Below, one piece after another: positions 13,342-63,262 of a stretch of 64,000 bases of DNA. Position 1 is the first letter of the stretch. Every line of letters begins with the position of its first letter. The DNA comes from Octopus sinensis (Eukaryota). Location of the stretch: NCBI RefSeq assembly GCF_006345805.1, contig NC_043000.1, positions 40,300,001-40,364,000 on the forward strand. Reading direction: 5' to 3'. The notes beneath the pieces are model-generated. The model worked only from the letters and a program-made list of their open reading frames with translations, had not been told where the DNA came from and did no database searches. A program made the position numbers and the translations under genes.

Positions 13342-13580
13342 TACCTATTTCTTTACTACCCACAAGGGGCTAAACACAGAGAGGACAAACAAGGTCGGAC
13401 AAACGGATTAAGTCGATTATATCGATCCCAGTGCGTAACTGGTATTTATTTAATCGACCCCGAAAGGATGAAAGGCAAAGTCGACCTCGGCGGAATTTGA
13501 ACTCAGAACGTAGCGACAGACAAAATACCGCTAAGCATTTTGCCCAGCATCGTAAAGATCCTGCCAGCTCGCATCCTTAA
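13342..13580 (-). mobile_element. SINE family B, full length
   Basis: Reverse complement TTAAGGATGCGAGCTGGCAGG...GTTCTGAGTTCAAATTCCGCCGAGGTCGACTTTGCCTTTCATCCTTTCGGGGTCG; about ten homologues in the window. Confidence 0.9.
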
Positions 13581-23064: not shown

Positions 23065-23222
23065 TTAAGGCGACGAGCTGGCAGAATCATCAGCGGCATT
23101 CAAACTCCGCCGAAGCCGGTCGAGGTCGATAAAATAAGTACCAGTTGATCACTGGAGTCGATGTAATCGATTTACTCCTTCCCTCCCTCTAAAATTGCTG
23201 GTCATGTGCCTATGATAGAAAG
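23065..23222 (+). mobile_element. SINE family B, internally deleted, followed by (CTA)n(TTA)n at 23223-23330
   Basis: TTAAGGCGACGAGCTGGCAGAATC head and AATAAGTACCAGTT...GTCGATGTAATCGA body. Confidence 0.8.
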
Positions 23223-43775: not shown

Positions 43776-44694
43776 CACAATTTGATTCAATTTTCGAATT
43801 AAACTGGATTCAGTTTGTATGTATGTATGTATGTATGTATGTATGTATGTATGTATGTATGTATGTATGTATGTATGCATGCATGTATGCTTGCTTGTAT
43901 GTATGCATGATTATGTAAAATCTTCCATAAAAACGTTTAAATTTGTATCACATAATTTTTAGGTTTAAAGATATCTTTCCCGAATCCCTTAAACTATTGA
44001 GCATTCATATTTCGCATGATAAATAACCCATCGTCTCCATACAGACCACCTCTTAAATTATTGAATCATTTGCTTAAATAATAAAGGCTATTGAACTCAC
44101 AGATTTATGCAGACTCAACGAGGTTATCCATCATTACAGGGAAAGAAATAGCATAATTTTCTTTGACTTTAAATCGTCGTTCAAAGCCAGTAATGAGTTT
44201 CTTGCGTGCCAGTAATAAGTTTCTTGTTTTTATCTCCGAATCATATATCACATATCAAAATATCTAGCGAGTTGGCAACAATCTTGTGACAATTACTGCA
44301 TCAGGCTCCAGCTAGTTTAAAAGTGTTTTATACTATTAGCGTGCATGTTCGACTGTTTCTTTTTAGTGTCTTGTAATAAGGTTTCAGCAATGTTTTTGAT
44401 ATCTTGAAATATCAGTAAAATCTGAGACTCATAGTCGCGATCTTTATACTTTATATATTTTGAACTTTATACATTACACATAAACACACACACACACACA
44501 TGCACACATACATTTATATGTATGTATGTACATACGTGTGCATCTATGCATATATATAAATATTTATATATATATATATATCTATATATGTATGTATATA
44601 TGTATTATATATATATATATATATGTAATATATATATATATATATATATAATATATATATGTATATATACGTATGTATATATATGTATGTATGT

Positions 44695-45400: not shown

Positions 45401-45436
45401 CTTTAAAGTTTCTAGCCTACGCTCTTCCTTGGAAAG
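45401..45436 (-). ncRNA. Degenerate hammerhead motif in pseudo-LTR copy ~45312-45560
   Basis: Reverse complement CTTT-CCAAGGA-A-GAGC-gtag-GCTA-GAAA-C-TT-T-AAAG; same family as 10225 and 44770. Confidence 0.5.
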
Positions 45437-46109
45437 GAACACAGAGAGAAACATGCAGAGAAAATAAAGAATGCGTAGTGGCTAACGATCTATCATGGCG
45501 AATGCCGGACAGAGGGGTCACACAGGAGACCCAGGAAGAAGGAGAGACAATAAAGTAGTGGTGATCCCAAAATGAAGGTGCGCGTGCGTGTGTATAAGAG
45601 AGCATATATGTGCGTGTGGAAGAGGGTTGGTGACCTTGACGTGTGCGTGTGCGCATGTGTAGGTGTGTAGATGATGGTGTGGGTGCTGGGATGTGGTCAG
45701 TACTAGTGTGCGCGTGGTGGTGTGATGTGATGTGGTGTTGTGTGGTATGGTAGTGTGTAGTGTGGTGGTGTGTGGTGGTTTTGGGATGTGGGGGAGGCGA
45801 GAGTGGGGAAAACAAGGGTGGGGTGTGGGTTAAACTGAAGGTGGGGGTAGAGGTGGGGTATATGTGAGTGCATGTAAGGGATGGTGTGAGGGTGGGATGG
45901 ATAAGGAAGGTGGGGTGGGATAGTGTAGGGGTGGGTTACGAGGGAGGGAGATGATGAATGAAGAGGAGAAAGGAGAAGGTGGGTAGGAGTGAAGAGAAGA
46001 GAGAAGGACGGTAGGAGTGAAGAGAAGTAAAAGTCGGAGTAAGAGAGGAGAGGTGGGTGGGAGGAAGTAGGTATGAGAGGAAGAGAGGAGAGGGGAGGAG
46101 AGTTGAGCC

Positions 46110-46660
46110 CATGTGACGCAAAAGAGCGAAGAGAGAAGATTAAACTCTGTTCACGGCGAAGACGGAAGTCCGGATGGCGCCTGTGCAAGGACAATCCGAA
46201 TACAGACAGGTGTCACAAAGAGCGACCGGTAGAGCAGAAATGGCGCGAGACCGGGGTGTCATTGCCGAGTCGGATGTCTCGGAGGTGTTCCACGAACCGG
46301 TCAGCCAAGTGGCATCCCGTTTGCCCGATGTACAGAGAATGGCAGAGAGAAAGGAGATGCAGTAGATGACGTTGCTAGAAGTGCAGTTGAAGGAGTCGGT
46401 GATATGATAGTGTCGATGATGGGTGTCGGTGAGGAGGGTGGTGTTGGAGAGGTAAGAGCAGGTGCAGTATAGTGGGCGGGAACAGGGGAACGAGCTGGGT
46501 TGGTAGGTTGGGTTAGAGAAGAAGCTGTGGACCAAGACGTCTCGTAGGTTGTGGGCTCGTTTGAAGGAGGGGAGGGGTCGGTTAGAGAAGATGTGCGAAG
46601 TAGAGTGGTCGGACTGGAATCGCCGGAAGGCTCGGAGAATGGTGCGTTGGAGAGGTAGGG
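46110..46660 (-). pseudogene. Penelope-like GIY-YIG endonuclease remnant (different subfamily from 9129-9565)
   Basis: ILRAFRRFQSD...PSFKRAHNLRDVLVHS...FPCSRPLYCTC...FNCTSSNVIYCIS/LYIGQTGRHLADRFVEHLRDI...REQSLIFSLRSFASHGLN. Confidence 0.88.
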
Positions 46661-47289: not shown

Positions 47290-47895
47290 AGGCGGTACTA
47301 GTTCCGGCGCTTTATGTTCGGGTTTCAAATTCCGCGAAGGTCTGCTTTTCATTTCATTCATCCGTGGTCGATAAGTTTTGGTACCAGTCAAGTGCTTGGG
47401 TTGATTTAAAAGACTACTCAAATCTTCCTAAATGTCTTGTCCTTTAGAAACAGTTACTATTACTGCTCTTATCAAGGAGACAAGCTGGCAGAGTCGATAC
47501 CGCGTCGGAAAAATAGATGTTTGGTAGCATTTCTTCCGACTTTACGTTTTGCGATCAAATGCCGCTGAAGTGAACTTTGCCTTTCATTCTTCCGGGTCCA
47601 TAAAATAAGTACCGGTTGAACGCTGTGGTTGAGGTAATCGACTTAGTTCCTACTCGGGAATTGCTAGCCCAGAGCCAAAATTTGCAGCGAGCTGACAGAA
47701 TCGTTAGCACGCCCGACAAAATGCTTAGAGGCATATGTTCTGTAGTTTTGCTCTGAATTCAAATGCCGTCGAGCACGATCTTGCCTTCCACCCTTTCGAG
47801 ATCGATAAAACAAGTGCCAGTTGATCACTAGGGTCGATGTAATCGAATTGCTCCCTAACCCCGAAATCGCTGGCCTTGTGCCAACATTTGAAACC
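47290..47895 (+). mobile_element. Head-to-tail run of SINE-B copies (weak ~47290-47410; 47477-47685; 47686-47895)
   Basis: Repeated GCTG(G/A)CAGA(G/A)TCG...CTTTGCCTTTCA/TTGCCTTCCA...GTAATCGA...GCCAA(A/C)ATTTG modules. Confidence 0.75.
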
Positions 47896-49624: not shown

Positions 49625-49933
49625 CAACAGCAGTGGTGGTAGTGTTAGTAGTAATGGTACAATAGATCTGACGATCGATATGTTGGTGATGATGCTGAGT
49701 TCATTTTACCGTTGTCTGCTGTACACTTTGTGATCGTCGTCGTCGTCGTCGTCGTCGTCGTAGTAGTAGTAGTAGTAGTAGTGGCGGTTCTGGTGGTGTT
49801 ATTGTGCATTTAGTGGAATGTGTGTGATTTGTCATAAAAGCCTCCAAGCATGATGCGATAATCAAGAATATTTTGTGAAGACGGATTTCCACAGGATGCT
49901 ATGTTGAATTATGAATTCTATAGTTCCTCAATA

Positions 49934-49978
49934 ATTAACTTCCAGCACTTTCTGACTCATACCTCCTCCCCACCCCGC

Positions 49979-50031
<53 letters not shown>

Positions 50032-50192
50032 GGGCAGCAATTTGTGGGGAAGGGATGAGTCGATTACATCGACCCCAGTGTTCAACTGGTACTTATTTAC
50101 CGACCCCGAAAGGATGAAAGGTAAAATCGACCTCGGCGGAATTTGAACTCAGAACGTAGCGACGGGTGAAATACTGCTAAGCATTCTGCCTG
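49934..50192 (-). repeat. Left copy of a 259/265 bp inverted duplication (partner 55041-55305)
   Basis: Base-by-base identical to the reverse complement of 55041-55305 except 17 versus 19 AAT units. Confidence 0.97.
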
Positions 50193-50230
50193 GCGTGCTG
50201 TGCTAACGATTCTGCTAGTTCGCTGCCTTA

Positions 50231-50231
<1 letters not shown>
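50031..50231 (-). mobile_element. SINE family B, full length, with (TAT)n tail
   Basis: Head TTAAGGCAGCGAACTAGCAGAATCGTTAGC matches 63045-63075. Confidence 0.92.
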
Positions 50232-50262
<31 letters not shown>

Positions 50263-50603
50263 AATAATAATAATAATTATAATAAGATTTTAAAAGGTTT
50301 GATGTAACTCTTCACAAATTAAACAAACAAGACGAAGAGCGAGATGCGATTGCAATATATATTTTATTGATTGAACAATATTTCGACAGCAAGTCTGTCT
50401 TTGTCGAGTTCCAAATAAGAAGTGATAAAATTTCAAAGTTATAGAAATTCTTTTTTTTTTCTTTTTTCTCTCTTTTTTTTTCTGTCTTTTTCTTTTCACC
50501 ACTTGAAACTGAAAGATTGATGATGTCATTCCAACGACGTGTGGATGCTAGTTGCTCTCATTCATATTTTAGATTTGAATTTCTATAATTCAACATCCCT
50601 TAT

Positions 50604-51078
50604 AAATGCTATACGAACACAAACTGTGTGTCGATAGCCAGCTGGAAAAGATGTTTTCCTAGGGCTAAAACAACAGTAACATCGTCCTTTAAGACTGCCA
50701 ACTTCTGTTGGCATATAAGCTTTACTATTCGGTACTGTTATTGTATATCTCTTACTCAGAGGTTTAAAACAAGTTGTTTTTCTATATATGAGATCAGCGA
50801 CCGTGTGTCGCTTAAAGAATATATAGTATTTGCGAGTAGAGAGAGCTTTCGTCACTAAACTGTGGTTGTCTCACACTGAGGACAGGTAATCACCCAAAAA
50901 CCTATGTGAGAAACACGTAAGGTTAGAGATGGGAGCGATGACCTCCCTTGCAAATGCTATACGAACACAAACTGTGTGTCAAAAGCCAGCTGTAAAAGAT
51001 GTTTTCCTGGGGCTAAAACAACAGTAACATCGTCCTTTATAGGACGGCTACATACTATTGGCATATAAACTTTACTAT
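50604..51078 (+). repeat. ~125 bp direct repeats (50604-50728 and 50952-51078) around a ~220 bp spacer
   Basis: AAATGCTATACGAACACAAACTGTGTGTC...GGGCTAAAACAACAGTAACATCGTCCTTTA...TTGGCATATAA(G/A)CTTTACTAT occurs twice; related sequence at ~48015-48075 on the opposite strand. Confidence 0.9.
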
Positions 51079-51193
51079 AATTTTGAATTTTTATCACTTT
51101 TTATTTTGAACTCGACAAAGAAAGGCTTACTGTCGAAATATCGTTCAGCCAATGAAATATCTATTGCAATCGCACCGCGCTCTTTGGCTTGTC

Positions 51194-51253
<60 letters not shown>

Positions 51254-51270
51254 TGATGATGATGATGATG

Positions 51271-51560
51271 ATAATCGACGTAGCATGCCCCGGTGACAGC
51301 AGGATCAATGTGAAAAAATAAATAACTATGACGATTTGAAGTGGAAAATACGAAGCTTGTGGTCAATGAGGTGCACTTACAAGTATCAGCACTCAGCTTC
51401 CAACATGGCTGAAAAAGATTGGCGCAAGTCTGAAGTAGAACACCTACAAAAATCAGCATTGCTTAGAACTGCAAGAATTCTTCGCAGCGTTCGTGAAGCA
51501 TGACCAGTAAACAAGTGTCACCTTTGTCTGCTGGCTGTGGACAGCTGATACTAAGCATCA
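51271..51560 (+). mobile_element. R4/Dong-like LINE 3' fragment, preceded by (TAA)n(TGA)n
   Basis: IIDVACPGDSRINVKK...YDDLKWKIRSLWSM...EHLQKSALLRTARILRSV. Confidence 0.8.
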
Positions 51561-52019
51561 TCGAAAATGATAATGCAAAGATCCTATGGGATTTTATGAT
51601 TCAGCGCGACCATGAGATAGAGAATAAGAAGCCAGACATAGTCTTAATTGAGAAAGAAACCAAACTATGCTGAATCATGGATATAGCATGCTCTGCTGAC
51701 AACAAGGTATGTGATAAGAAAGAGAAGTCGATTGGTATGACAGGTTAGCTTGGGATGTAAAGCAGTTGTGGACGATGAAAAAGGTGGTAGTGGCATTAAT
51801 AATTGTCGGAGCCCTGGAAACTGTGAGTAAAAATCTCGAGAACTACATGGACCAAATAGGGGCTGCAATAAGGGTGGAGCACTTGTAGAAAATAACACTG
51901 CTTGGAACCGCTTGAATACTCCGGAAGGTGCTCGAAAAATAAGAGGTGTTACCTTAGTTCACTGGTAGTGAACAGCTAACACCGTAGTAAATCTCCTGAG
52001 TTAGAAGCTGTGCAAAGGC

Positions 52020-52087
<68 letters not shown>

Positions 52088-52138
52088 TAATAATAATAAC
52101 AATAATAATAAAATGGAATAATAATAATAATAATAATA
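51557..52138 (+). mobile_element. R4/Dong-like LINE 3' end with (TAA)n tail (52021-52138)
   Basis: ENDNAKILWDFMIQRDHEIENKKPDIVLIEKETKLC*IMDIAC...IIVGALETVSKNL...LLGTA*ILRKVLE: PD..D-type restriction-like endonuclease. Confidence 0.9.
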
Positions 52139-52139
52139 T

Positions 52140-52406
52140 GGAGGTCAAAGTCCCAGAGGATCTTTGCCTTCCCGTTTTTATCCATTACCTGTTCCGGTGT
52201 ATAATGGTTCTAAGCACCCGTCACCTCGTGTCCATTCTTCCGGCATAATAGCTAGTAAAGGTTTTGGATTACCTTGTACTCTTTCTGCGCAAGACTTTCA
52301 CAAGCACTAACAATGTGAGTCACACTTTCGACCTTCTTCCCACACATTCTGCAGAGGTTTGTTGCATTTGTGTGGTGTATATCCCTTTTATAACATGGTT
52401 CTTGGT
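52140..52406 (-). mobile_element. R4/Dong-like LINE CCHC zinc-knuckle fragment
   Basis: CRMCGKKVESVTHIVSACESLAQKEYK...MDKNGKAKILWDFD. Confidence 0.88.
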
Positions 52407-52745
52407 ACCAACATGCACAGGAAAAGTTAATGGATGAAAACGGAAAGGCAAAGACCTTATGGGACTTTGATTTCCAGACAGACAAGGTGTTAGAGCACCA
52501 AAAGCCGGATATAGTAACCTTTAGGAGGGAAAATAAGAGTGCCTAATAATCGACGAGGCATATTATCATGAAAGAAAGAGAAAAGGTTGATAAAAATGGA
52601 ATCCTGATAATTGAAATCGCCAAGATAGGGCAGTTGCGGGAGTCAGTCATAAAGGTTGTTCCTGTTGTCATCGGAGCATTGAGTTCAATATCCAACCTGA
52701 AGAAACATCTGGACACTTTAGGAATATCCTACGGCGTAAATTCGG
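52403..52745 (+). mobile_element. R4/Dong-like LINE endonuclease fragment
   Basis: WYQHAQEKLMDENGKAKTLWDFDFQTDKVLEHQKPDIV...KEREKVDK...VVPVVIGALSSI. Confidence 0.88.
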
Positions 52746-53675
52746 ATAAATAATCTGAAATAGAAGTTTTTTTCCCCCACTAATTTCTTAAAAAAATGGC
52801 GACAGAGAGTCTAATAAAACTTTTAATCGAAACGCTATAAGTTGAGGCATGTCTGTATTTATATCAATGGTTCTCGCCTGGTTCTTTAATTTTGGTGTCT
52901 GAATCTAATCTAATGTTTTTAGTTTTAAGATTTCAAATTTGCCTCATAATAATAGCTTTCACATAGTTTTGCTTCATACTAAGTATTAAATTTCATCTGA
53001 GTAAGTGTAGAATTTTTTTATATATTATCCAGTAGGGTATTAATGTTTCGTAGATAGTGTTATTTATGTAATGAGAGAATTTATAATTTTTCAGTCGCGT
53101 TTACAACCATTAGCGGCTTCATTTAGCAAATTCGGCAGTGTACGCTACAACCGGTATGGTTCCAAAATATAAGACTCTCGGTATTTCGCCACATCTCCTT
53201 GTTTAAGTTCAGGGTTGAAATTTCGCCAGGTTCAAATATTCTTTTCATACTTCTAGGATCAACTACATAATATACAATTAAAGTACTAGGGTAAATTCAA
53301 TCTACTGAGCTAACACCTACCAATACCCACCAACATTCGCTACCATTTCGTAACGTCACCAGTTCAACTATGGCCGCGTGCTTATGTTAATAGCCATTAT
53401 TATATATACAGTATAATCATTATTAAGGACACAGTACATATATAGTACATACACATGTTATTAATTAGCTGTTTATTATTAACTAAGGCAGTATGGATCG
53501 CCTATAGGTTTCCAGATGCAAGATTAGTTTGATAATTTTGTTTCATGTGAAATTACCGTTCACGCCCCACGTATACCTAAACAAGTAAGCATATACACAC
53601 TGATATATATGTGTGGGTGTGTGTTTTGTGGGTTCACACACAGACACACGTATATATATGTATGAAGTATCTGTG

Positions 53676-53718
<43 letters not shown>

Positions 53719-53762
53719 ATATAGGTAGGTAGGTATACACATAGATAGATACATAGACCGAC

Positions 53763-53830
<68 letters not shown>

Positions 53831-54328
53831 GGATAGATAGATAGATACATAGATACATACATACATACATACATACATACATACATACATACATACATAC
53901 ATACATACATGCATACATACATACATACATGACAAGTTGGTTATGCTAAGTCGGTCAGTCAGGTTTTATCCATTAAATATATCTCGTGAAATGAAGAAAT
54001 GTCAGAGATTGATATAATGGCAGTCTTTGTTATGTGAGCAGTAACTTATCTCACCGCTGATGGTTTGGGGATATAAAGCAGGAAACAACCGGACTATTCT
54101 AATAGCCCAGAAAATCTAATTTTATCTTTGAAAACAAGCTAACTATTTTAAGACCTCAAAATGAATAAATAAAGAAGAAAATTAAGAAAGAAAGGAAAAA
54201 TAAAATTACTTCTTGAACAAATCACTCACTCCCTAGAATTACTTCTTTCGTCGATTCGTAACCTATACACACTACTAGATATACATATATATGAACCTAT
54301 GTGTATTTATATATACATACATACATAT

Positions 54329-54385
<57 letters not shown>

Positions 54386-54411
54386 CACACATACATACAT
54401 ACATACATACG

Positions 54412-54444
<33 letters not shown>

Positions 54445-54494
54445 TCATACATACATACATACATATATACATACGTACACACACACACACACAC

Positions 54495-54546
<52 letters not shown>

Positions 54547-54547
54547 A

Positions 54548-54696
54548 GCGCCGGAGTGGCTGTTTCGTAAGTAGCTTGCTTACCAACTACATGATCCTGG
54601 GTTCAGTCTCACTGCGTGGCACCTTGAGCAAGTGTCTTGAACCGACCAAATCCTTGTGAGTGGATTTGGTGGACGGAAACTGGAAGAAGCCTGTCG

Positions 54697-54727
<31 letters not shown>

Positions 54728-54944
54728 CAGTGTTTGTCCCCCCCACCCCACCAACATGGCTTGACAACCGATGCTGGTGTGTTTACGTCTCCGTAACTTA
54801 GCGGTTCGGCAAAAGAGACCGATAAAATAAGTACTAGGCTTACAAAGAATAAGCTCTAAGGTCAATTTGCTCGACTAAAGGTGGTGCTTCAGCATGGCCG
54901 TAGTCGGGTGGCTGAAACAAGTAAAAGGATAAAAGAGTAAAAGA
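54548..54944 (+). mobile_element. SINE family A, near full length
   Basis: Collinear with 7470-7868; flanked by (TA)n on both sides. Confidence 0.9.
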
Positions 54945-55040
54945 ATATATATATATATACTAGCAGAATTGCCCGGCGAATCTCGGGGCTGAATTGCTTG
55001 AAAGTACTGTTAATGATTGCACTGAATTATGATGATTATT

Positions 55041-55201
55041 CAGGCAGAATGCTTAGCAGTATTTCACCCGTCGCTACGTTCTGAGTTCAAATTCCGCCGA
55101 GGTCGATTTTACCTTTCATCCTTTCGGGGTCGGTAAATAAGTACCAGTTGAACACTGGGGTCGATGTAATCGACTCATCCCTTCCCCACAAATTGCTGCC
55201 C

Positions 55202-55260
<59 letters not shown>

Positions 55261-55305
55261 GCGGGGTGGGGAGGAGGTATGAGTCAGAAAGTGCTGGAAG
55301 TTAAT
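55041..55305 (+). repeat. Right copy of the inverted duplication (headless SINE-B + (TTA)n + 45 bp flank)
   Basis: See 49934-50192. Confidence 0.97.
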
Positions 55306-55670
55306 CATTATGCATGTAGGAAAACAGTGCTGTTCAATAAAGTTTCGACCAGGGTCAAGCAATCCGACCCCATGGGCTCCTTTGACAGCACTGATGTATG
55401 TGACCTCATCGTGTTGTATATCCTTGATACTCTTAAGAAAATGTTTCCCTCTCTCCTCTTTGGTCTCTACAGTGATGATGCCATGCCATCTCCAGAGGAG
55501 CAAACGGAGACACCCTAGACAGGCTTAGGAAAGATCTAATTAGCACACTTGGCTCCATGAGACTGAAAATTACCATCGAGACCAATCTCATCACCGCGGA
55601 CTTCTTAGACGTCACGCTTGACTTGGGCTCCTGTACATACAGGCCCTACCGCGAACCAAATGAGAGGCTT
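55306..55670 (+). pseudogene. Penelope-like reverse transcriptase remnant
   Basis: IIMH/RKTVLFN...PMGSFDSTDVCDLIVLYILD...GLYSDDA...RLRKDLI...LKITIETNLITADFLDVTLDLGSCTYRPYREPN; matches PLE MGSFDGAEVCEL, YRDD and DFLDVTL motifs. Confidence 0.88.
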
Positions 55671-56202
55671 AGTATTCAAGAAGAGAAATAACACGGAAAC
55701 TTTTGTTTTCTTAAAAAGTGGGACGACGGTCGTAAAGAAAAGTCATATAAACTTTCATTCACTGGACTCATTCATTCAAAAATACATACACAGCTGGCTG
55801 GCTACATGGATGGATGGATGGAGAGAGAGCGGGAGAGAGAGGGATCTGTTTCAACAATAACATATTCACTTGATCGATCAAGTGTTTAACCCAAGGTTAA
55901 CCGTTGTCCCTTACACATATGATAAAAAATAATGCAATCGTGGTCATCATGTTATTTCATCAGAGGTAGCACATCTAAAACTATAATCCCTAATGCTGTG
56001 GTTACCTTGGTATTCTAAGGCTGTTTTTCATCCGCAAGTCAGTCCTTATCTGGAAGACCTTTAATAAAAGATGCCTCAGCCATGACTAACCTATTCTTAC
56101 TTCAGACATTGTAAGGTGAGGCATGCATTATACAGCTATCTTCTTTTTCAAGATATGGTGATGCACAGTGTGTGTCTGTTTGAGTCAGTATATGAGTTTG
56201 TT

Positions 56203-58207: not shown

Positions 58208-60480
58208 CCCTTGGTCTACCAGAGAAAATGTATGTCACTAGTTACCAACAGGGTCCAATGCACCCAATATTTTTCTTATAATTAAATTTAATTCAAACTA
58301 ACACTATTTCTTAGCTACATTATATATGCTATCACGTGAATGAAGAATTTGTGTTTCTCACAAATTTTTATTTAAAAAATACAGCTTACAGAATATATTA
58401 TAAATTTTAAAAAATTACAAAAGTACATAATTACAGCTCTTCGTGGCAGTGAATGCAGACATCATTGGAATGTTCTTGGCAAACATGGATATTGCAATTC
58501 TTACATGTAGTACGAGTTTTCCTGTTATTTTGGGGCAAAACAAAGAACATCTTTTTTTCTTTGGCTGAGGACTCGCAAATGAGCTTGAAGATCGTCTTCT
58601 TATCTTGTTTGGTTGAGAAATGTTAGCGGAACTAGAAAATTGTTTGTCATGTTCTTGTTTAACATTAACTTCAGCAAGATCCTTTCCTAAATGAATTAGG
58701 CACTGTCTTTTTTTAGCCTTGAAACTTTGCAAGTGAAGCTGTTTAGCAACAATGAAAGCATTCACTGTACTTATAACAGTCACGTTGTAGAATATAACCA
58801 TAGGCCATCTTCGAGTCATTCTTTTGCAAGTGTATGTCCTTACCATCTTATTTAGGGTATTTCCTTTTGTTTTGTTGTAACATGTAATAACTTCAGGTTT
58901 CTTTTCATCACTTTTTGAATCAACTGAAGGCTGAGAGTGCATTGTACTCATAAGTGTGACTACATAATTTTCCTTGGAACAATAAGATAGGATCTTAGAA
59001 TCCTTTTGAAATCCAAATATTGTGATGTTGATTTCTGTTTCTTTTCCATTTGTGAAAACACTAGGAAGTTCAACTCTGTTCTTTCTAATTGTTCCAACTA
59101 AAGTAGATTTCTTGCTAAGCAACTTTCAAGTCAATCCTAGACTTGTAAAGAAAATTATCACAAGTTATATTGCAACCAGTATTTTCAAGTTCTTTTACTA
59201 GGTCTTCAACAACTCTTGAACCTTGATTTGTTTCTCCCCCTTTTACTGGGTCTTTTCCAGTGTAGATTTGCCTTTTCCAGGCATAATATGGTTTACTGTC
59301 GCATATTACCCAAATTTTAATTTCATATTTCCCTGGTTTTGAAGGAATATATACCCAGAATGGGCAGCGCCCTCTGAATGAAACTAGTTAACTGTCATAC
59401 ATGAACTTGGGACATATCCATCTTGCAAATTCTGAATCCACATTCCAAATACCTCTCTTATGGGTTCCAATTTATCATCATTTCTCTCTTTTCCTTCTTG
59501 TACTAGCAACATCAAAATGCAATACTTGTAAAATCTGTTGAAATTTTCCCCGGCTCATAATTTTGTTGATTATTGGGGAAAGGGGCATCTTCTTGACTCC
59601 ATAACTGTTAGACATTTTCATGTTTAGATTTATAAACACCTATAAGAATAATCAGTCCAATAAATTTCTTTAGTTCAGAGTGAGCAATTTCCTTCCGTTT
59701 ATCTTTGTAAACAACCTGACCATCAGCATTTGTCCATTTAAGGATTGCTTCAAGAAGATTCTGATGCATAAAGATAGTAAAATATGTTTCAATTCTATCA
59801 CGTCATTTTAGCAAAACAGGATGGTCCACATTCTTGGCGCACAATATTGCAAGATAAAGTTCATACTGCTGCTTGAGTAAGAGGATTAGAATGCCAAACT
59901 TCTTGCCTGTCTCTAGAAATATTGCTCATCCATAATTGGGTGGCTGGCAGATAACTTTTTGAGTTTTTGAGTATCTTCATCATCTAATAACACAGAACCC
60001 AAACTGTCCAGCAACACAATCACTTTCACCATCATCTTCAGAGCAACCAATACTATCTTCTTCCCATTCTTCATTTAATTCCAATAACCTTTTCGGTATT
60101 TGGTCTTCACTCAAATTTTCACGTTTAGGCATATTGGAAAACACAGCCGAACTATATGAAACTTGATAGCAAACTAAAGGCAGATATTTGTTCTCTCTCA
60201 TATTAATACTCTCCTGAAAGATGATGCAATAAGTTGTAGGAATTGCGTCGTCACATAGAAATATTGCATCTCCTAGCAGATTAAAAGTGATGCAAAAACC
60301 ACACAAATTTACAGAAATATTTTCATAATTTTTCCTATTTTATCTGAACTTCAGCAAATAAAATGAATTCAATTTTATCCATTTTATATCTGATAAATAT
60401 CTAGGAAAATAATATTTGATACTGCTTTTATTCTGTTTAGAATGACAAGAATATTGTCTGAATTTAATTCGAGGGTTCAA
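58208..60480 (-). mobile_element. piggyBac DNA transposon, decayed; one terminus clear, the other uncertain
   Basis: TTAA (58204-58207) followed by CCCTTGGTCTACC and a subterminal GGGTCCAATGCACCC; contains the transposase remnant. A similar GGGTTCAATGGAC at ~60473 suggests the other end. Confidence 0.85.
58415..60132 (-). pseudogene. piggyBac (PGBD4-like) transposase pseudogene
   Basis: Acidic N-terminus MPKRENLSEDQI; FRGRCPFWVYIPSKPGKYEIKIW; NITCDNFFTS; TLVGTIRKNR; YNKTKG; RRWPMVIFY; Cys-rich tail. Multiple stops and frameshifts. Confidence 0.93.
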
Positions 60481-62882: not shown

Positions 62883-63017
62883 ATTTCAAATTTTGGCACA
62901 AATCTCAGCAATTTCGTGGAAGGGGATATGTTGATTGCATCGACCCTAGAGTTCAACTGGTACTAACTCTATCGACTCCAAAAGAATGAAAGGTAAAGTC
63001 GATCTCGGAGGAATTTG
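62883..63017 (-). mobile_element. SINE family B, 3' part
   Basis: Reverse complement of the CAAATTCC..CGAG.TCGACTTTACCTTTCATTC...GTACCAGTTGAAC...GTGCCAAAATTTGAAA module. Confidence 0.75.
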
Positions 63018-63044
63018 TTTTAGTGTTTAATATTAGAAATACTT

Positions 63045-63262
63045 TTAAGGCAGCGAGCTGGCAGAATCGTTAGCTCACCGGATGGAAATGCTTAGCAGCA
63101 TTTTATCCGTGTGTATGTTCTGGCTTTAAATGTCGCCAAGGTCAACTTTGCCTTTCATCCTCACGAGGTCGGTAAAATAAGTATCAGTTGAGCACTGGGG
63201 TTGATATAATCGAGTTATCCCATCGCCCGAAATTGCTGGTCTTGTGCCAAAATTTGAAACCA
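63045..63262 (+). mobile_element. SINE family B, full length
   Basis: TTAAGGCAGCGAGCTGGCAGAATCGTTAGC...GTGCCAAAATTTGAAACC. Confidence 0.88.

What the first reader, a model, noticed from the sequence alone, without database searches (positions are those of the whole stretch)
49934..55305. ~4.85 kb inversion with a ~260 bp inverted duplication at its breakpoints (staggered-break signature)
Seen: S = 55041-55305 is identical to the reverse complement of 49934-50192 except for two AAT units, and includes 45 bp of non-SINE flank. The SINE-B head continues only at 50193-50231 (inside the segment), while the flank continues into a Penelope RT only at 55306+ (outside). The inner right end ...GAATTATGATGATTATT and the reverse complement of the outer left flank (AT)TATTGAGGAACTATAG overlap by 4-6 bp. 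Inference: the ancestral order was L-M(inverted)-S-R and became L-S(inverted)-M-S-R through an inversion with one long and one short staggered break. Established: such inverted duplications mark staggered-break inversions in Drosophila. Complete identity implies a very recent, possibly polymorphic event.
Basis: partly seen in the sequence, partly recalled or inferred. Interest (0 to 1): 0.75.

Follow-up and report, generated by a model that had tools for sequence, protein, structure and literature searches.

The report
Small inversion flanked by inverted duplication
In a repeat-filled, gene-free stretch of an octopus genome, a 4.85 kb segment is bracketed by two identical, oppositely oriented 260-base copies, most likely the scar of a recent small inversion, which is a well-known and here probably neutral kind of rearrangement.

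Summary
Bases 49934-50192 are the exact reverse complement of 55041-55305. The only difference is two extra ATT units on the right. All 206 non-microsatellite positions match, including 45 bases that are not part of the SINE. Other copies of this SINE in the window are only 75-88% identical. Only the left arm runs on into the SINE head (50193-50231).

The arms are therefore one local DNA-level duplication. They are not two SINE insertions and not transposon terminal repeats.

The 45-base flank is not part of the Penelope-like reverse transcriptase. Homology to that enzyme starts exactly at 55306. The window alone therefore does not show which outer junction is ancestral.

A second detail holds up. 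AATA(AT) at the left junction is mirrored by (AT)TATT at the inner right junction. The chance of this is about 0.1-0.6%. It fits a second, short staggered break.

My estimates:
- Inversion with a flanking inverted duplication: about 0.5.
- Inverted templated insertion with no inversion: about 0.17.
- Assembly artefact: about 0.15.
- Retroposition: about 0.06.

No orthologous locus or reads could be reached. The segment holds only repeat fragments. This is a known kind of event and of low interest.

The parts
49930..49935 (.). Hexamer AATAAT at the outer left junction. The first four bases belong to flank L and the last two to the left arm. It is the mirror of ATTATT at 55035-55040 and is the candidate short duplication from breakpoint 1.
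   Evidence: Read directly from the sequence. Chance of a flush inverted match: 0.6% for 4 nt and 0.085% for 6 nt.
49934..49978 (-). Left copy of the 45-nt unique, non-SINE flank.
   Evidence: Identical to the reverse complement of 55261-55305. No other copy in the window.
49979..50031 (-). Left (AAT)n tract of 17.7 units, which replaces the canonical SINE 3' tail.
50032..50192 (-). SINE body in the left arm, SINE positions 40-200.
   Evidence: 100% identical to 55041-55201.
50193..50231 (-). SINE head, positions 1-39. It is single copy and contiguous with the left arm only, which shows that the S'|M junction is ancestral.
   Evidence: Alignment with other family copies; blastn query positions 1-298.
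50193..55040 (.). Spacer M of 4,848 bp, the segment proposed to be inverted. It contains only repeat fragments: three partial copies of a roughly 260-nt SINE-like unit (50327-51192), LINE-type fragments (51500-51700 and 52139-52750), microsatellites, and a second SINE family at 54506-54959.
55035..55040 (.). Hexamer ATTATT at the inner right junction, the last bases of M. It is the mirror of 49930-49935.
55041..55201 (+). SINE body in the right arm. It starts abruptly at SINE position 40, which makes M|S a novel junction.
55202..55260 (+). Right (ATT)n tract of 19.7 units, two more than on the left.
55261..55305 (+). Right copy of the 45-nt unique flank.
   Evidence: It is not RT-homologous.
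55306..55673 (+). Decayed fragment of a Penelope-like element reverse transcriptase. It covers about residues 286-414 of a 713-aa relative and carries one frameshift near 55485. Its 5' edge coincides with the end of the duplication.
   Evidence: phmmer hits. The homologues P0067 and P0079 carry GIY-YIG C-termini. tblastn. The HMM alignment starts at His 55306-08.

Best explanation
This is most likely a recent small inversion with a flanking inverted duplication. The proposed ancestral order was L - M(reversed) - full-length SINE with its (ATT)n tail and 45-nt flank - Penelope fragment. Two breaks occurred. The first was a short stagger of 4-6 nt (AATAAT) between L and reversed M. The second was a long stagger of about 260 nt, with one nick inside the SINE at position 39/40 and the other 45 nt beyond the SINE tail. 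The overhangs were filled in and the middle fragment was rejoined in reverse by end joining with almost no homology. This copied the roughly 260-nt stretch to both ends of the inverted 4.85 kb segment in opposite orientation, and did the same for the hexamer. Shown by the data: the structure, the identity of the arms, continuity of the SINE across the left inner junction, the abrupt break at the right inner junction, junction homology of 0-2 nt, and the mirrored hexamer. Inferred: the ancestral order, the staggered-nick chemistry as opposed to two replicative template switches giving the same product, the young age, and neutrality (no gene lies in or near the segment).
For: The arms are identical at 206 of 206 non-microsatellite sites, including the 45 nt of non-SINE flank. 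Family copies in the window are 75-88% identical. The left copy carries about 7% private differences from the window's family consensus. It also has a 5-nt internal duplication, has lost the canonical 3' tail and has an internal T4 run. The right arm shares all of these, so it is a DNA-level copy. The SINE head is contiguous only with the left arm. The right arm has no flush target-site duplication and the pair has none either. The mirrored AATA(AT)/(AT)TATT sits exactly at the two novel junctions, with a chance of 0.6% for 4 nt and 0.085% for 6 nt. The duplication size falls within the range reported for staggered-break inversions, and one-sided long duplications are the commoner case there (PMC1885836). 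There are no N gaps in the window.
Against: The ancestral order was not observed. No orthologous locus, read set or second assembly could be reached. RT homology does not cross 55305/55306, so S|R continuity rests only on the mirrored hexamer argument. That argument is post hoc and lies in AT-rich sequence. The end of the duplication coincides, within a few bases, with the 5' edge of the Penelope fragment, and the model does not explain this. A single assembly cannot prove that the junctions exist in the animal.
Confidence: 0.5

Rival explanations
1. Inverted dispersed duplication without an inversion. The ancestral order was L - S' - M - R with M in its present orientation. A break at the M|R boundary was repaired by copying about 265 nt from the left copy, 4.85 kb away, in inverted orientation. 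This could be templated insertion or template switching during break-induced or synthesis-dependent repair.
For: This model gives the same final structure with the same two novel junctions. The RT test leaves S|R free to be the novel junction. A short imperfect match exists at the priming site: AAT, then a mismatch, at 49930-33 against 55306-09.
Against: There is no usable microhomology at either junction for priming or re-annealing: at most 1 nt at M|S, and a terminal mismatch at the L side. The model gives no role to the mirrored AATA(AT)/(AT)TATT at the junctions. Templated insertions of several hundred bases are less common than short ones (my own background knowledge).
Confidence: 0.17
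2. Assembly artefact. One or both novel junctions come from chimeric reads or a mis-join in repeat-rich sequence, or from mixing two haplotypes. The animal would then carry only one copy of the 260-nt stretch.
For: The region is saturated with SINEs and microsatellites. Perfect identity of the arms is also what a computational duplication would give. No read evidence is available.
Against: There are no gaps (N count 0). The arms differ by two microsatellite units, so they were not simply copied. The structure has a 4.85 kb unique spacer and two precise junctions, unlike the spacer-less palindromes of missed-adapter reads or the kilobase-scale haplotig duplications (background knowledge). A mis-join at a repeat would not place the unique 45 nt next to two different flanks.
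Confidence: 0.15
3. Retroposition. Either the right arm is a 5'-truncated retrocopy of a read-through transcript of the left SINE that carried 45 nt of 3' flank, or both arms are independent insertions of a young SINE variant whose unit includes the (ATT)n tract and the 45 nt.
For: 5' truncation, as seen in the right arm, is typical of retrocopies. An older inverted pair of another SINE-like family lies within M at 86% identity, so inverted same-family pairs do occur here. A loose direct repeat flanks the right arm: ATTATGATG at 55027-35 and ATTATGCATG at 55307-16.
Against: That repeat is not flush with the insert and is imperfect. The copy has lost the family's conserved 3' tail and has an internal T4 run, which is a Pol III terminator, so it is a poor source element. 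A retrocopy landing 4.85 kb from its source in a genome of about 2.8 Gb is very improbable. Only about 4,500 recently active SINE insertions in about 900 families are reported for O. vulgaris (PMC13282606), so two of one family within 5 kb is unlikely. The 45 nt has no further copy in the window.
Confidence: 0.06
4. Ectopic recombination between two pre-existing inverted SINE insertions, or terminal inverted repeats of a DNA transposon or foldback element.
For: Inverted repeats bracket a discrete segment.
Against: The arms include 45 nt of non-SINE sequence and are 100% identical, against 75-88% for the family. One arm is just the continuation of a full SINE into M. No target-site duplication is present: the outer flanks read CCTCAATA and CATTATGC. 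Recombination would in any case not explain where the duplicated flank came from.
Confidence: 0.02

Closest known systems
Staggered-break inversions with inverted duplications at the breakpoints (Drosophila melanogaster group; Ranz et al. 2007, PMC1885836)
   Same: Ancestrally single-copy sequence is present in inverted orientation at both ends of the segment. The duplication size of 259-265 nt compares with a reported median of 321 bp and a range of 46 bp to 1.9 kb. [quoted passage not shown] The junctions lack extended homology.
   Different: Those inversions span many genes and were polarised with outgroups. Their duplicates average 88% identity. Here the segment is only 4.85 kb of repeats, the arms are identical, the organism is a cephalopod, and the polarity is not established.
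Complex structural variants of the class 'inversion with flanking duplication' (dupINV / INVdup) and inverted dispersed duplications in human population catalogues (my own knowledge, not checked here)
   Same: The size scale is the same, kilobases with sub-kilobase duplications. So is the ambiguity: from the derived allele alone, an inversion with a flanking duplication cannot be told from an inverted dispersed duplication.
   Different: The human cases are usually attributed to replicative template switching with microhomology. Here one junction is blunt and the other has at most 2 nt (6 nt with one mismatch).
Inversions by non-allelic recombination between inverted repeats (for example human polymorphic inversions, PMC3961182)
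   Same: The present arms, 260 nt and 100% identical, could from now on mediate repeated flipping of the 4.85 kb segment.
   Different: Recombination cannot have created the arms. They are not independent repeat insertions.

Membership tests
Staggered-break inversion with inverted duplication | The same sequence is present in inverted orientation at the two ends of the segment, and includes non-repetitive sequence. | tested here: met
   259/265 nt are 100% identical, including a unique 45 nt.
Staggered-break inversion with inverted duplication | The duplicated sequence is single copy, and the intervening segment has the opposite orientation, in the ancestral or outgroup arrangement. | not testable with these tools
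   No orthologous locus or second assembly was reachable. The RT-continuity test for polarity was negative.
Staggered-break inversion with inverted duplication | One copy of the duplicate stays contiguous with the inverted segment and the other with the outside flank. | tested here: inconclusive
   The inner half is met: the SINE head at 50193-50231 is continuous with the left arm. The outer half is not shown: the flank abuts the Penelope fragment but is not part of it.
Staggered-break inversion with inverted duplication | Novel junctions are formed by end joining, with no long homology. | tested here: met
   0 nt at 55040|55041. At 49933|49934 there are 1-2 nt, or 6 nt with one mismatch.
Staggered-break inversion with inverted duplication | A second breakpoint may also leave an inverted duplication. 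| tested here: met
   AATA(AT) at 49930-35 mirrors (AT)TATT at 55035-40. Chance is 0.6% for 4 nt and 0.085% for 6 nt. This is a post hoc observation.
Two independent SINE insertions, or recombination between them | Similarity is confined to the element, each copy has its own flanks and target-site duplication, and divergence is typical of the family. | tested here: not met
   The shared 45-nt flank, 100% identity against 75-88% for the family, and shared private mutations and tail loss.
Retrocopy with 3' transduction | Flush target-site duplication, a 3' tail at the new site, and a transcriptionally competent source. | tested here: not met
   There is no flush duplication and no tail after GTTAAT. 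The source has an internal T4 run and has lost the conserved 3' tail. Only the 5' truncation fits.
Penelope-like element (the right flank) | Reverse transcriptase of the Penelope type, whose full-length relatives carry a GIY-YIG endonuclease. | tested here: met
   60 hits with a best E-value of 1.7e-10. The relatives P0067 and P0079 have GIY-YIG C-termini. The tblastn match covers 55306-55673 only, so this is a fragment of about 128 residues with one frameshift. Pfam gave no hit to the pieces.
DNA transposon or foldback element with terminal inverted repeats | Terminal inverted repeats flanked by a target-site duplication, with the unit repeated elsewhere. | tested here: not met
   The outer flanks CCTCAATA and CATTATGC share no duplication. 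No other copy is in the window. The arm is part of a SINE that runs on into the spacer.

The most novel reading that the evidence does not exclude
This would be the first molecularly resolved staggered-break micro-inversion in a cephalopod. It would be less than about 2 My old and possibly still polymorphic. Its 260-nt perfect inverted arms could now let the 4.85 kb segment flip repeatedly by recombination. That would show that the Drosophila-type mechanism also works at kilobase scale in a lophotrochozoan genome known for large-scale rearrangement.
Probability: 0.4. Interest if true: 0.3.

Novelty: new member of a known kind. Interest (0 to 1): 0.2.

Why it matters
If real, this is a clean and very young example of how inversions arise by staggered breakage and not by recombination between repeats, in a group where breakpoint-level data are scarce. 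Both junctions and both duplications (about 260 nt and 4-6 nt) are still unblurred by mutation, so it is a good teaching case and a possible polymorphic marker. It touches no gene and contains only decayed repeats. No functional consequence is expected, and the mechanism is already well described elsewhere.

Tried and rejected
1. I searched the protein collection with the 138-aa reading frame that spans the right outer junction, hoping to pull other assemblies of the locus. Nothing was on record.

2. I searched with the piggyBac-like frame at 58415-59122, 3 kb to the right. Only paralogues came back, at most 83% identical, from Octopus vulgaris, O. sinensis and O. bimaculoides. This names the genus but gives no orthologous locus.

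3. An exact-pattern scan of metagenome contigs for 31 nt of the 45-nt flank gave 0 matches.

4. I tested whether the reverse-transcriptase homology crosses 55305/55306, using a family HMM, 2,000 random and 1,000 shuffled extensions, and leave-one-out grafts. There was no signal, and the power control was positive.

5. I looked for the missing N-terminal half of that RT next to any junction. None was found. The only other fragment is an unrelated copy at 43970-44251 on the - strand.

6. I looked for repeats bridging L with reversed M, or M with R. None was found.

7. The 10-mer TGAATTATGA occurs near both left-hand junction sides (49906 and 55023), with p of about 0.01. In the rebuilt site it would form a 10-bp hairpin, but the fold is no more stable than shuffles (z = -0.8). 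I dropped it as a cause.

8. Rfam and tRNA scans of 48-58 kb gave only sub-threshold microsatellite matches and no tRNA.

9. Pfam on the reading frames inside M gave only a weak zf-RVT hint.
Full report
**What is there**

A local alignment of 49900-50260 against the reverse complement of 55000-55340 gives one block. It runs 49934-50192 on the left and 55041-55305 on the right. There are no substitutions and a single 6-nt gap inside the trinucleotide tract. The repeat finder reports the same arms independently (pairs I1 and I3).

Leaving the microsatellite aside, 161 SINE positions and 45 flank positions are compared, and all 206 are identical. The tracts are 17.7 AAT units on the left and 19.7 on the right. 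One mismatch (49933) is followed by three more matching bases, which is not significant. The window has no N gaps.

**Is it more than chance or ordinary repeat similarity?**

The arm is mostly a SINE. Its other copies in this 64 kb window lie at 13411-13544, 23120-23183, 47543-47877 and 62906-63238. They are 75-88% identical to it. At 12% divergence, the probability of 206 identical sites is about 4e-12.

The 45 bases beyond the (ATT)n tract have no other copy in the window.

Aligned with its relatives, the left copy differs from the local family consensus at about 7% of positions. It also has a 5-nt internal duplication and an internal T4 run. It has lost the family's conserved 3' tail (GTGCCAAAATTTGAAACC...), which is replaced by the ATT tract. 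The right arm shares every one of these features. The two arms are therefore copies of each other at the DNA level. They are not two insertions from a master element.

**Anatomy of the four junctions**

Call the pieces L (up to 49933), S' (49934-50192), M (50193-55040), S (55041-55305) and R (from 55306).

- **S'|M is ancestral.** SINE positions 1-39 continue at 50193-50231.
- **M|S is novel.** The right arm starts at SINE position 40, directly after the unrelated sequence ...GATGATTATT, with no shared base.
- **One of the two outer junctions, L|S' or S|R, must also be novel.**

R is indeed a decayed fragment of a Penelope-like reverse transcriptase. An exhaustive phmmer search gave 60 hits with a best E-value of 1.7e-10. 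Full-length relatives such as P0067 and P0079 end in GIY-YIG endonuclease domains. tblastn limits the fragment to 55306-55673, with one frameshift near 55485.

The flank itself is not RT. A family HMM aligns from the histidine at 55306-08. Adding the 15 residues encoded by the flank changes the score by +0.3 bit, and 857 of 2,000 random 45-mers from the window do as well. In leave-one-out grafts, the true 15 residues from 17 of 21 relatives add 8-14 bits, so the test has power.

The N-terminal half of the RT is not found next to any junction. The RT therefore cannot show that S|R is ancestral. The end of the duplication simply coincides, within a few bases, with the 5' edge of an old, truncated Penelope fragment. 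I cannot explain that coincidence. With three independent break positions in DNA where repeat boundaries occur every few hundred bases, it is not extreme.

**What does discriminate**

The last four bases of L (AATA, 49930-33) are the reverse complement of the last four bases of M (TATT, 55037-40). The match is six bases (AATAAT/ATTATT) if the first two bases of S' are counted.

Random position pairs in this window show such a flush inverted match in 0.6% of cases for 4 nt and 0.085% for 6 nt.

In the inversion model this is the expected trace of a second, short staggered break. The ancestral ...CCTC-AATAAT-CATCATAATTC... would leave the hexamer on both products, with 2 nt of overlap used in joining L to S'. 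In the model where an inverted copy of S' was inserted between M and R, the hexamer has no role.

This favours the inversion.

**Other readings**

*Retroposition.* A 5'-truncated retrocopy of a read-through transcript, or two insertions of a composite young element, would explain the 5' truncation. Against it:
- There is no flush target-site duplication. The best candidate, ATTATGATG and ATTATGCATG, is imperfect and offset.
- There is no 3' tail.
- The source copy is a poor template.
- Landing 4.85 kb from the source in a genome of about 2.8 Gb is very unlikely.
- O. vulgaris is reported to have only about 4,500 recently active SINE insertions in about 900 families (PMC13282606).

*Transposon terminal repeats and recombination between independent SINEs.* Both are excluded by the shared flank, by the absence of a target-site duplication, and by the SINE running on into M.

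*Assembly artefact.* This cannot be excluded without reads. However, the arms differ in microsatellite length, there are no gaps, and the structure is unlike the usual palindromic-read or haplotig artefacts.

**Age**

Zero differences in 206 sites gives a 95% upper bound of 1.46% divergence. The O. vulgaris repeat study calibrates a Jukes-Cantor distance of 0.065 at about 18 My and 0.09 at about 25 My, or about 0.0036 per My per lineage (PMC13282606). On that calibration the event is younger than about 2 My. Gene conversion between the arms would make this an underestimate.

**Context and consequence**

The closest relatives of the piggyBac-like frame at 58415-59122 are Octopus proteins, so the window is from an Octopus genome.

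M holds only repeat debris:
- three partial copies of a roughly 260-nt SINE-like unit (50327-51192);
- LINE-type fragments;
- long microsatellites;
- a second SINE family at 54506-54959.

No gene is seen in or near the segment, so the rearrangement is probably neutral.

**Comparison with what is known**

The structure matches the staggered-break model proposed for Drosophila inversions. In that study, 17 of 29 inversions carry inverted duplications of non-repetitive sequence. The duplications range from 46 bp to 1.9 kb with a median of 321 bp, and in 12 of 18 cases they come from only one breakpoint (PMC1885836).

It also matches the human complex-variant class "inversion with flanking duplication". 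From my own knowledge, that class is not distinguishable from an inverted dispersed duplication when only the derived allele is available.

The defining features that need an outgroup could not be tested. I therefore file this as a probable new member of a known kind, not a proven one.

**Verdict**

| Explanation | Estimated probability |
|---|---|
| Inversion with flanking inverted duplication | about 0.5 |
| Inverted templated insertion, no inversion | about 0.17 |
| Assembly artefact | about 0.15 |
| Retroposition | about 0.06 |

Interest is low (0.2). The event is a neat, young example of a well-described mechanism, it lies in non-genic repeat sequence, and it cannot be verified here.

Noticed in passing
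window 50327-51275: An older inverted pair lies inside M. The arms 50327-50447 and 51071-51192 are 86% complementary. There is also a direct repeat, 50593-50728 against 50941-51078, at 88%. Read together, they look like three partial copies of one roughly 260-nt SINE-like unit that ends in a (TAA)n(TGA)n tail. The full SINE of the finding sits right against the tail of the inverted partial copy (50232-50290).
   Followed up: partly
window 55306 (edge of the Penelope-like fragment 55306-55673): The outer end of the right arm coincides, within a few bases, with the point where reverse-transcriptase homology begins in mid-domain. Neither the inversion model nor the insertion model explains the coincidence.
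   Followed up: partly
window 49906-49915 and 55023-55032: The 10-mer TGAATTATGA occurs only twice in the window. One copy lies 18 nt before the left outer junction and the other 8 nt before the right inner junction. The chance is about 1%. In the rebuilt ancestral site it would form a 10-bp hairpin around breakpoint 1, but the fold is not unusually stable (z = -0.8).
   Followed up: yes
window 43970-44251 (- strand): A second, unrelated decayed Penelope-like RT fragment covers the same part of the enzyme (residues about 277-369 of P0067).
   Followed up: partly
window 58415-59122 (- strand): A 235-aa open frame matches the C-terminal part of a piggyBac-type transposase (Pfam DDE_Tnp_1_7, E = 6e-13). 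It is 75-83% identical to proteins of Octopus vulgaris, O. sinensis and O. bimaculoides. This is what identifies the genus.
   Followed up: partly
window 45417-46535 (- strand): Three overlapping open frames have a cysteine-rich stretch (...SSNVIYCISFLSAILCTSGKRDAT...) that resembles the GIY-YIG region of Penelope-like elements. Pfam gave no significant hit.
   Followed up: no
window 51500-51700, 52139-52218 (- strand), 52397-52750: These are fragments with the motif KILWDF..Q.D......KPDIV and a later VVPVVIGALSSIS stretch. They are typical of the C-terminal region of a non-LTR retrotransposon protein. One neighbouring frame gives a weak zf-RVT hit (E = 0.0045).
   Followed up: partly
window 50100-50110 / 55123-55133 (SINE body): This SINE copy has TTTT where its relatives have CTTTG. 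That is a potential Pol III terminator inside the element, which argues that this copy is not a transcriptionally competent source.
   Followed up: partly
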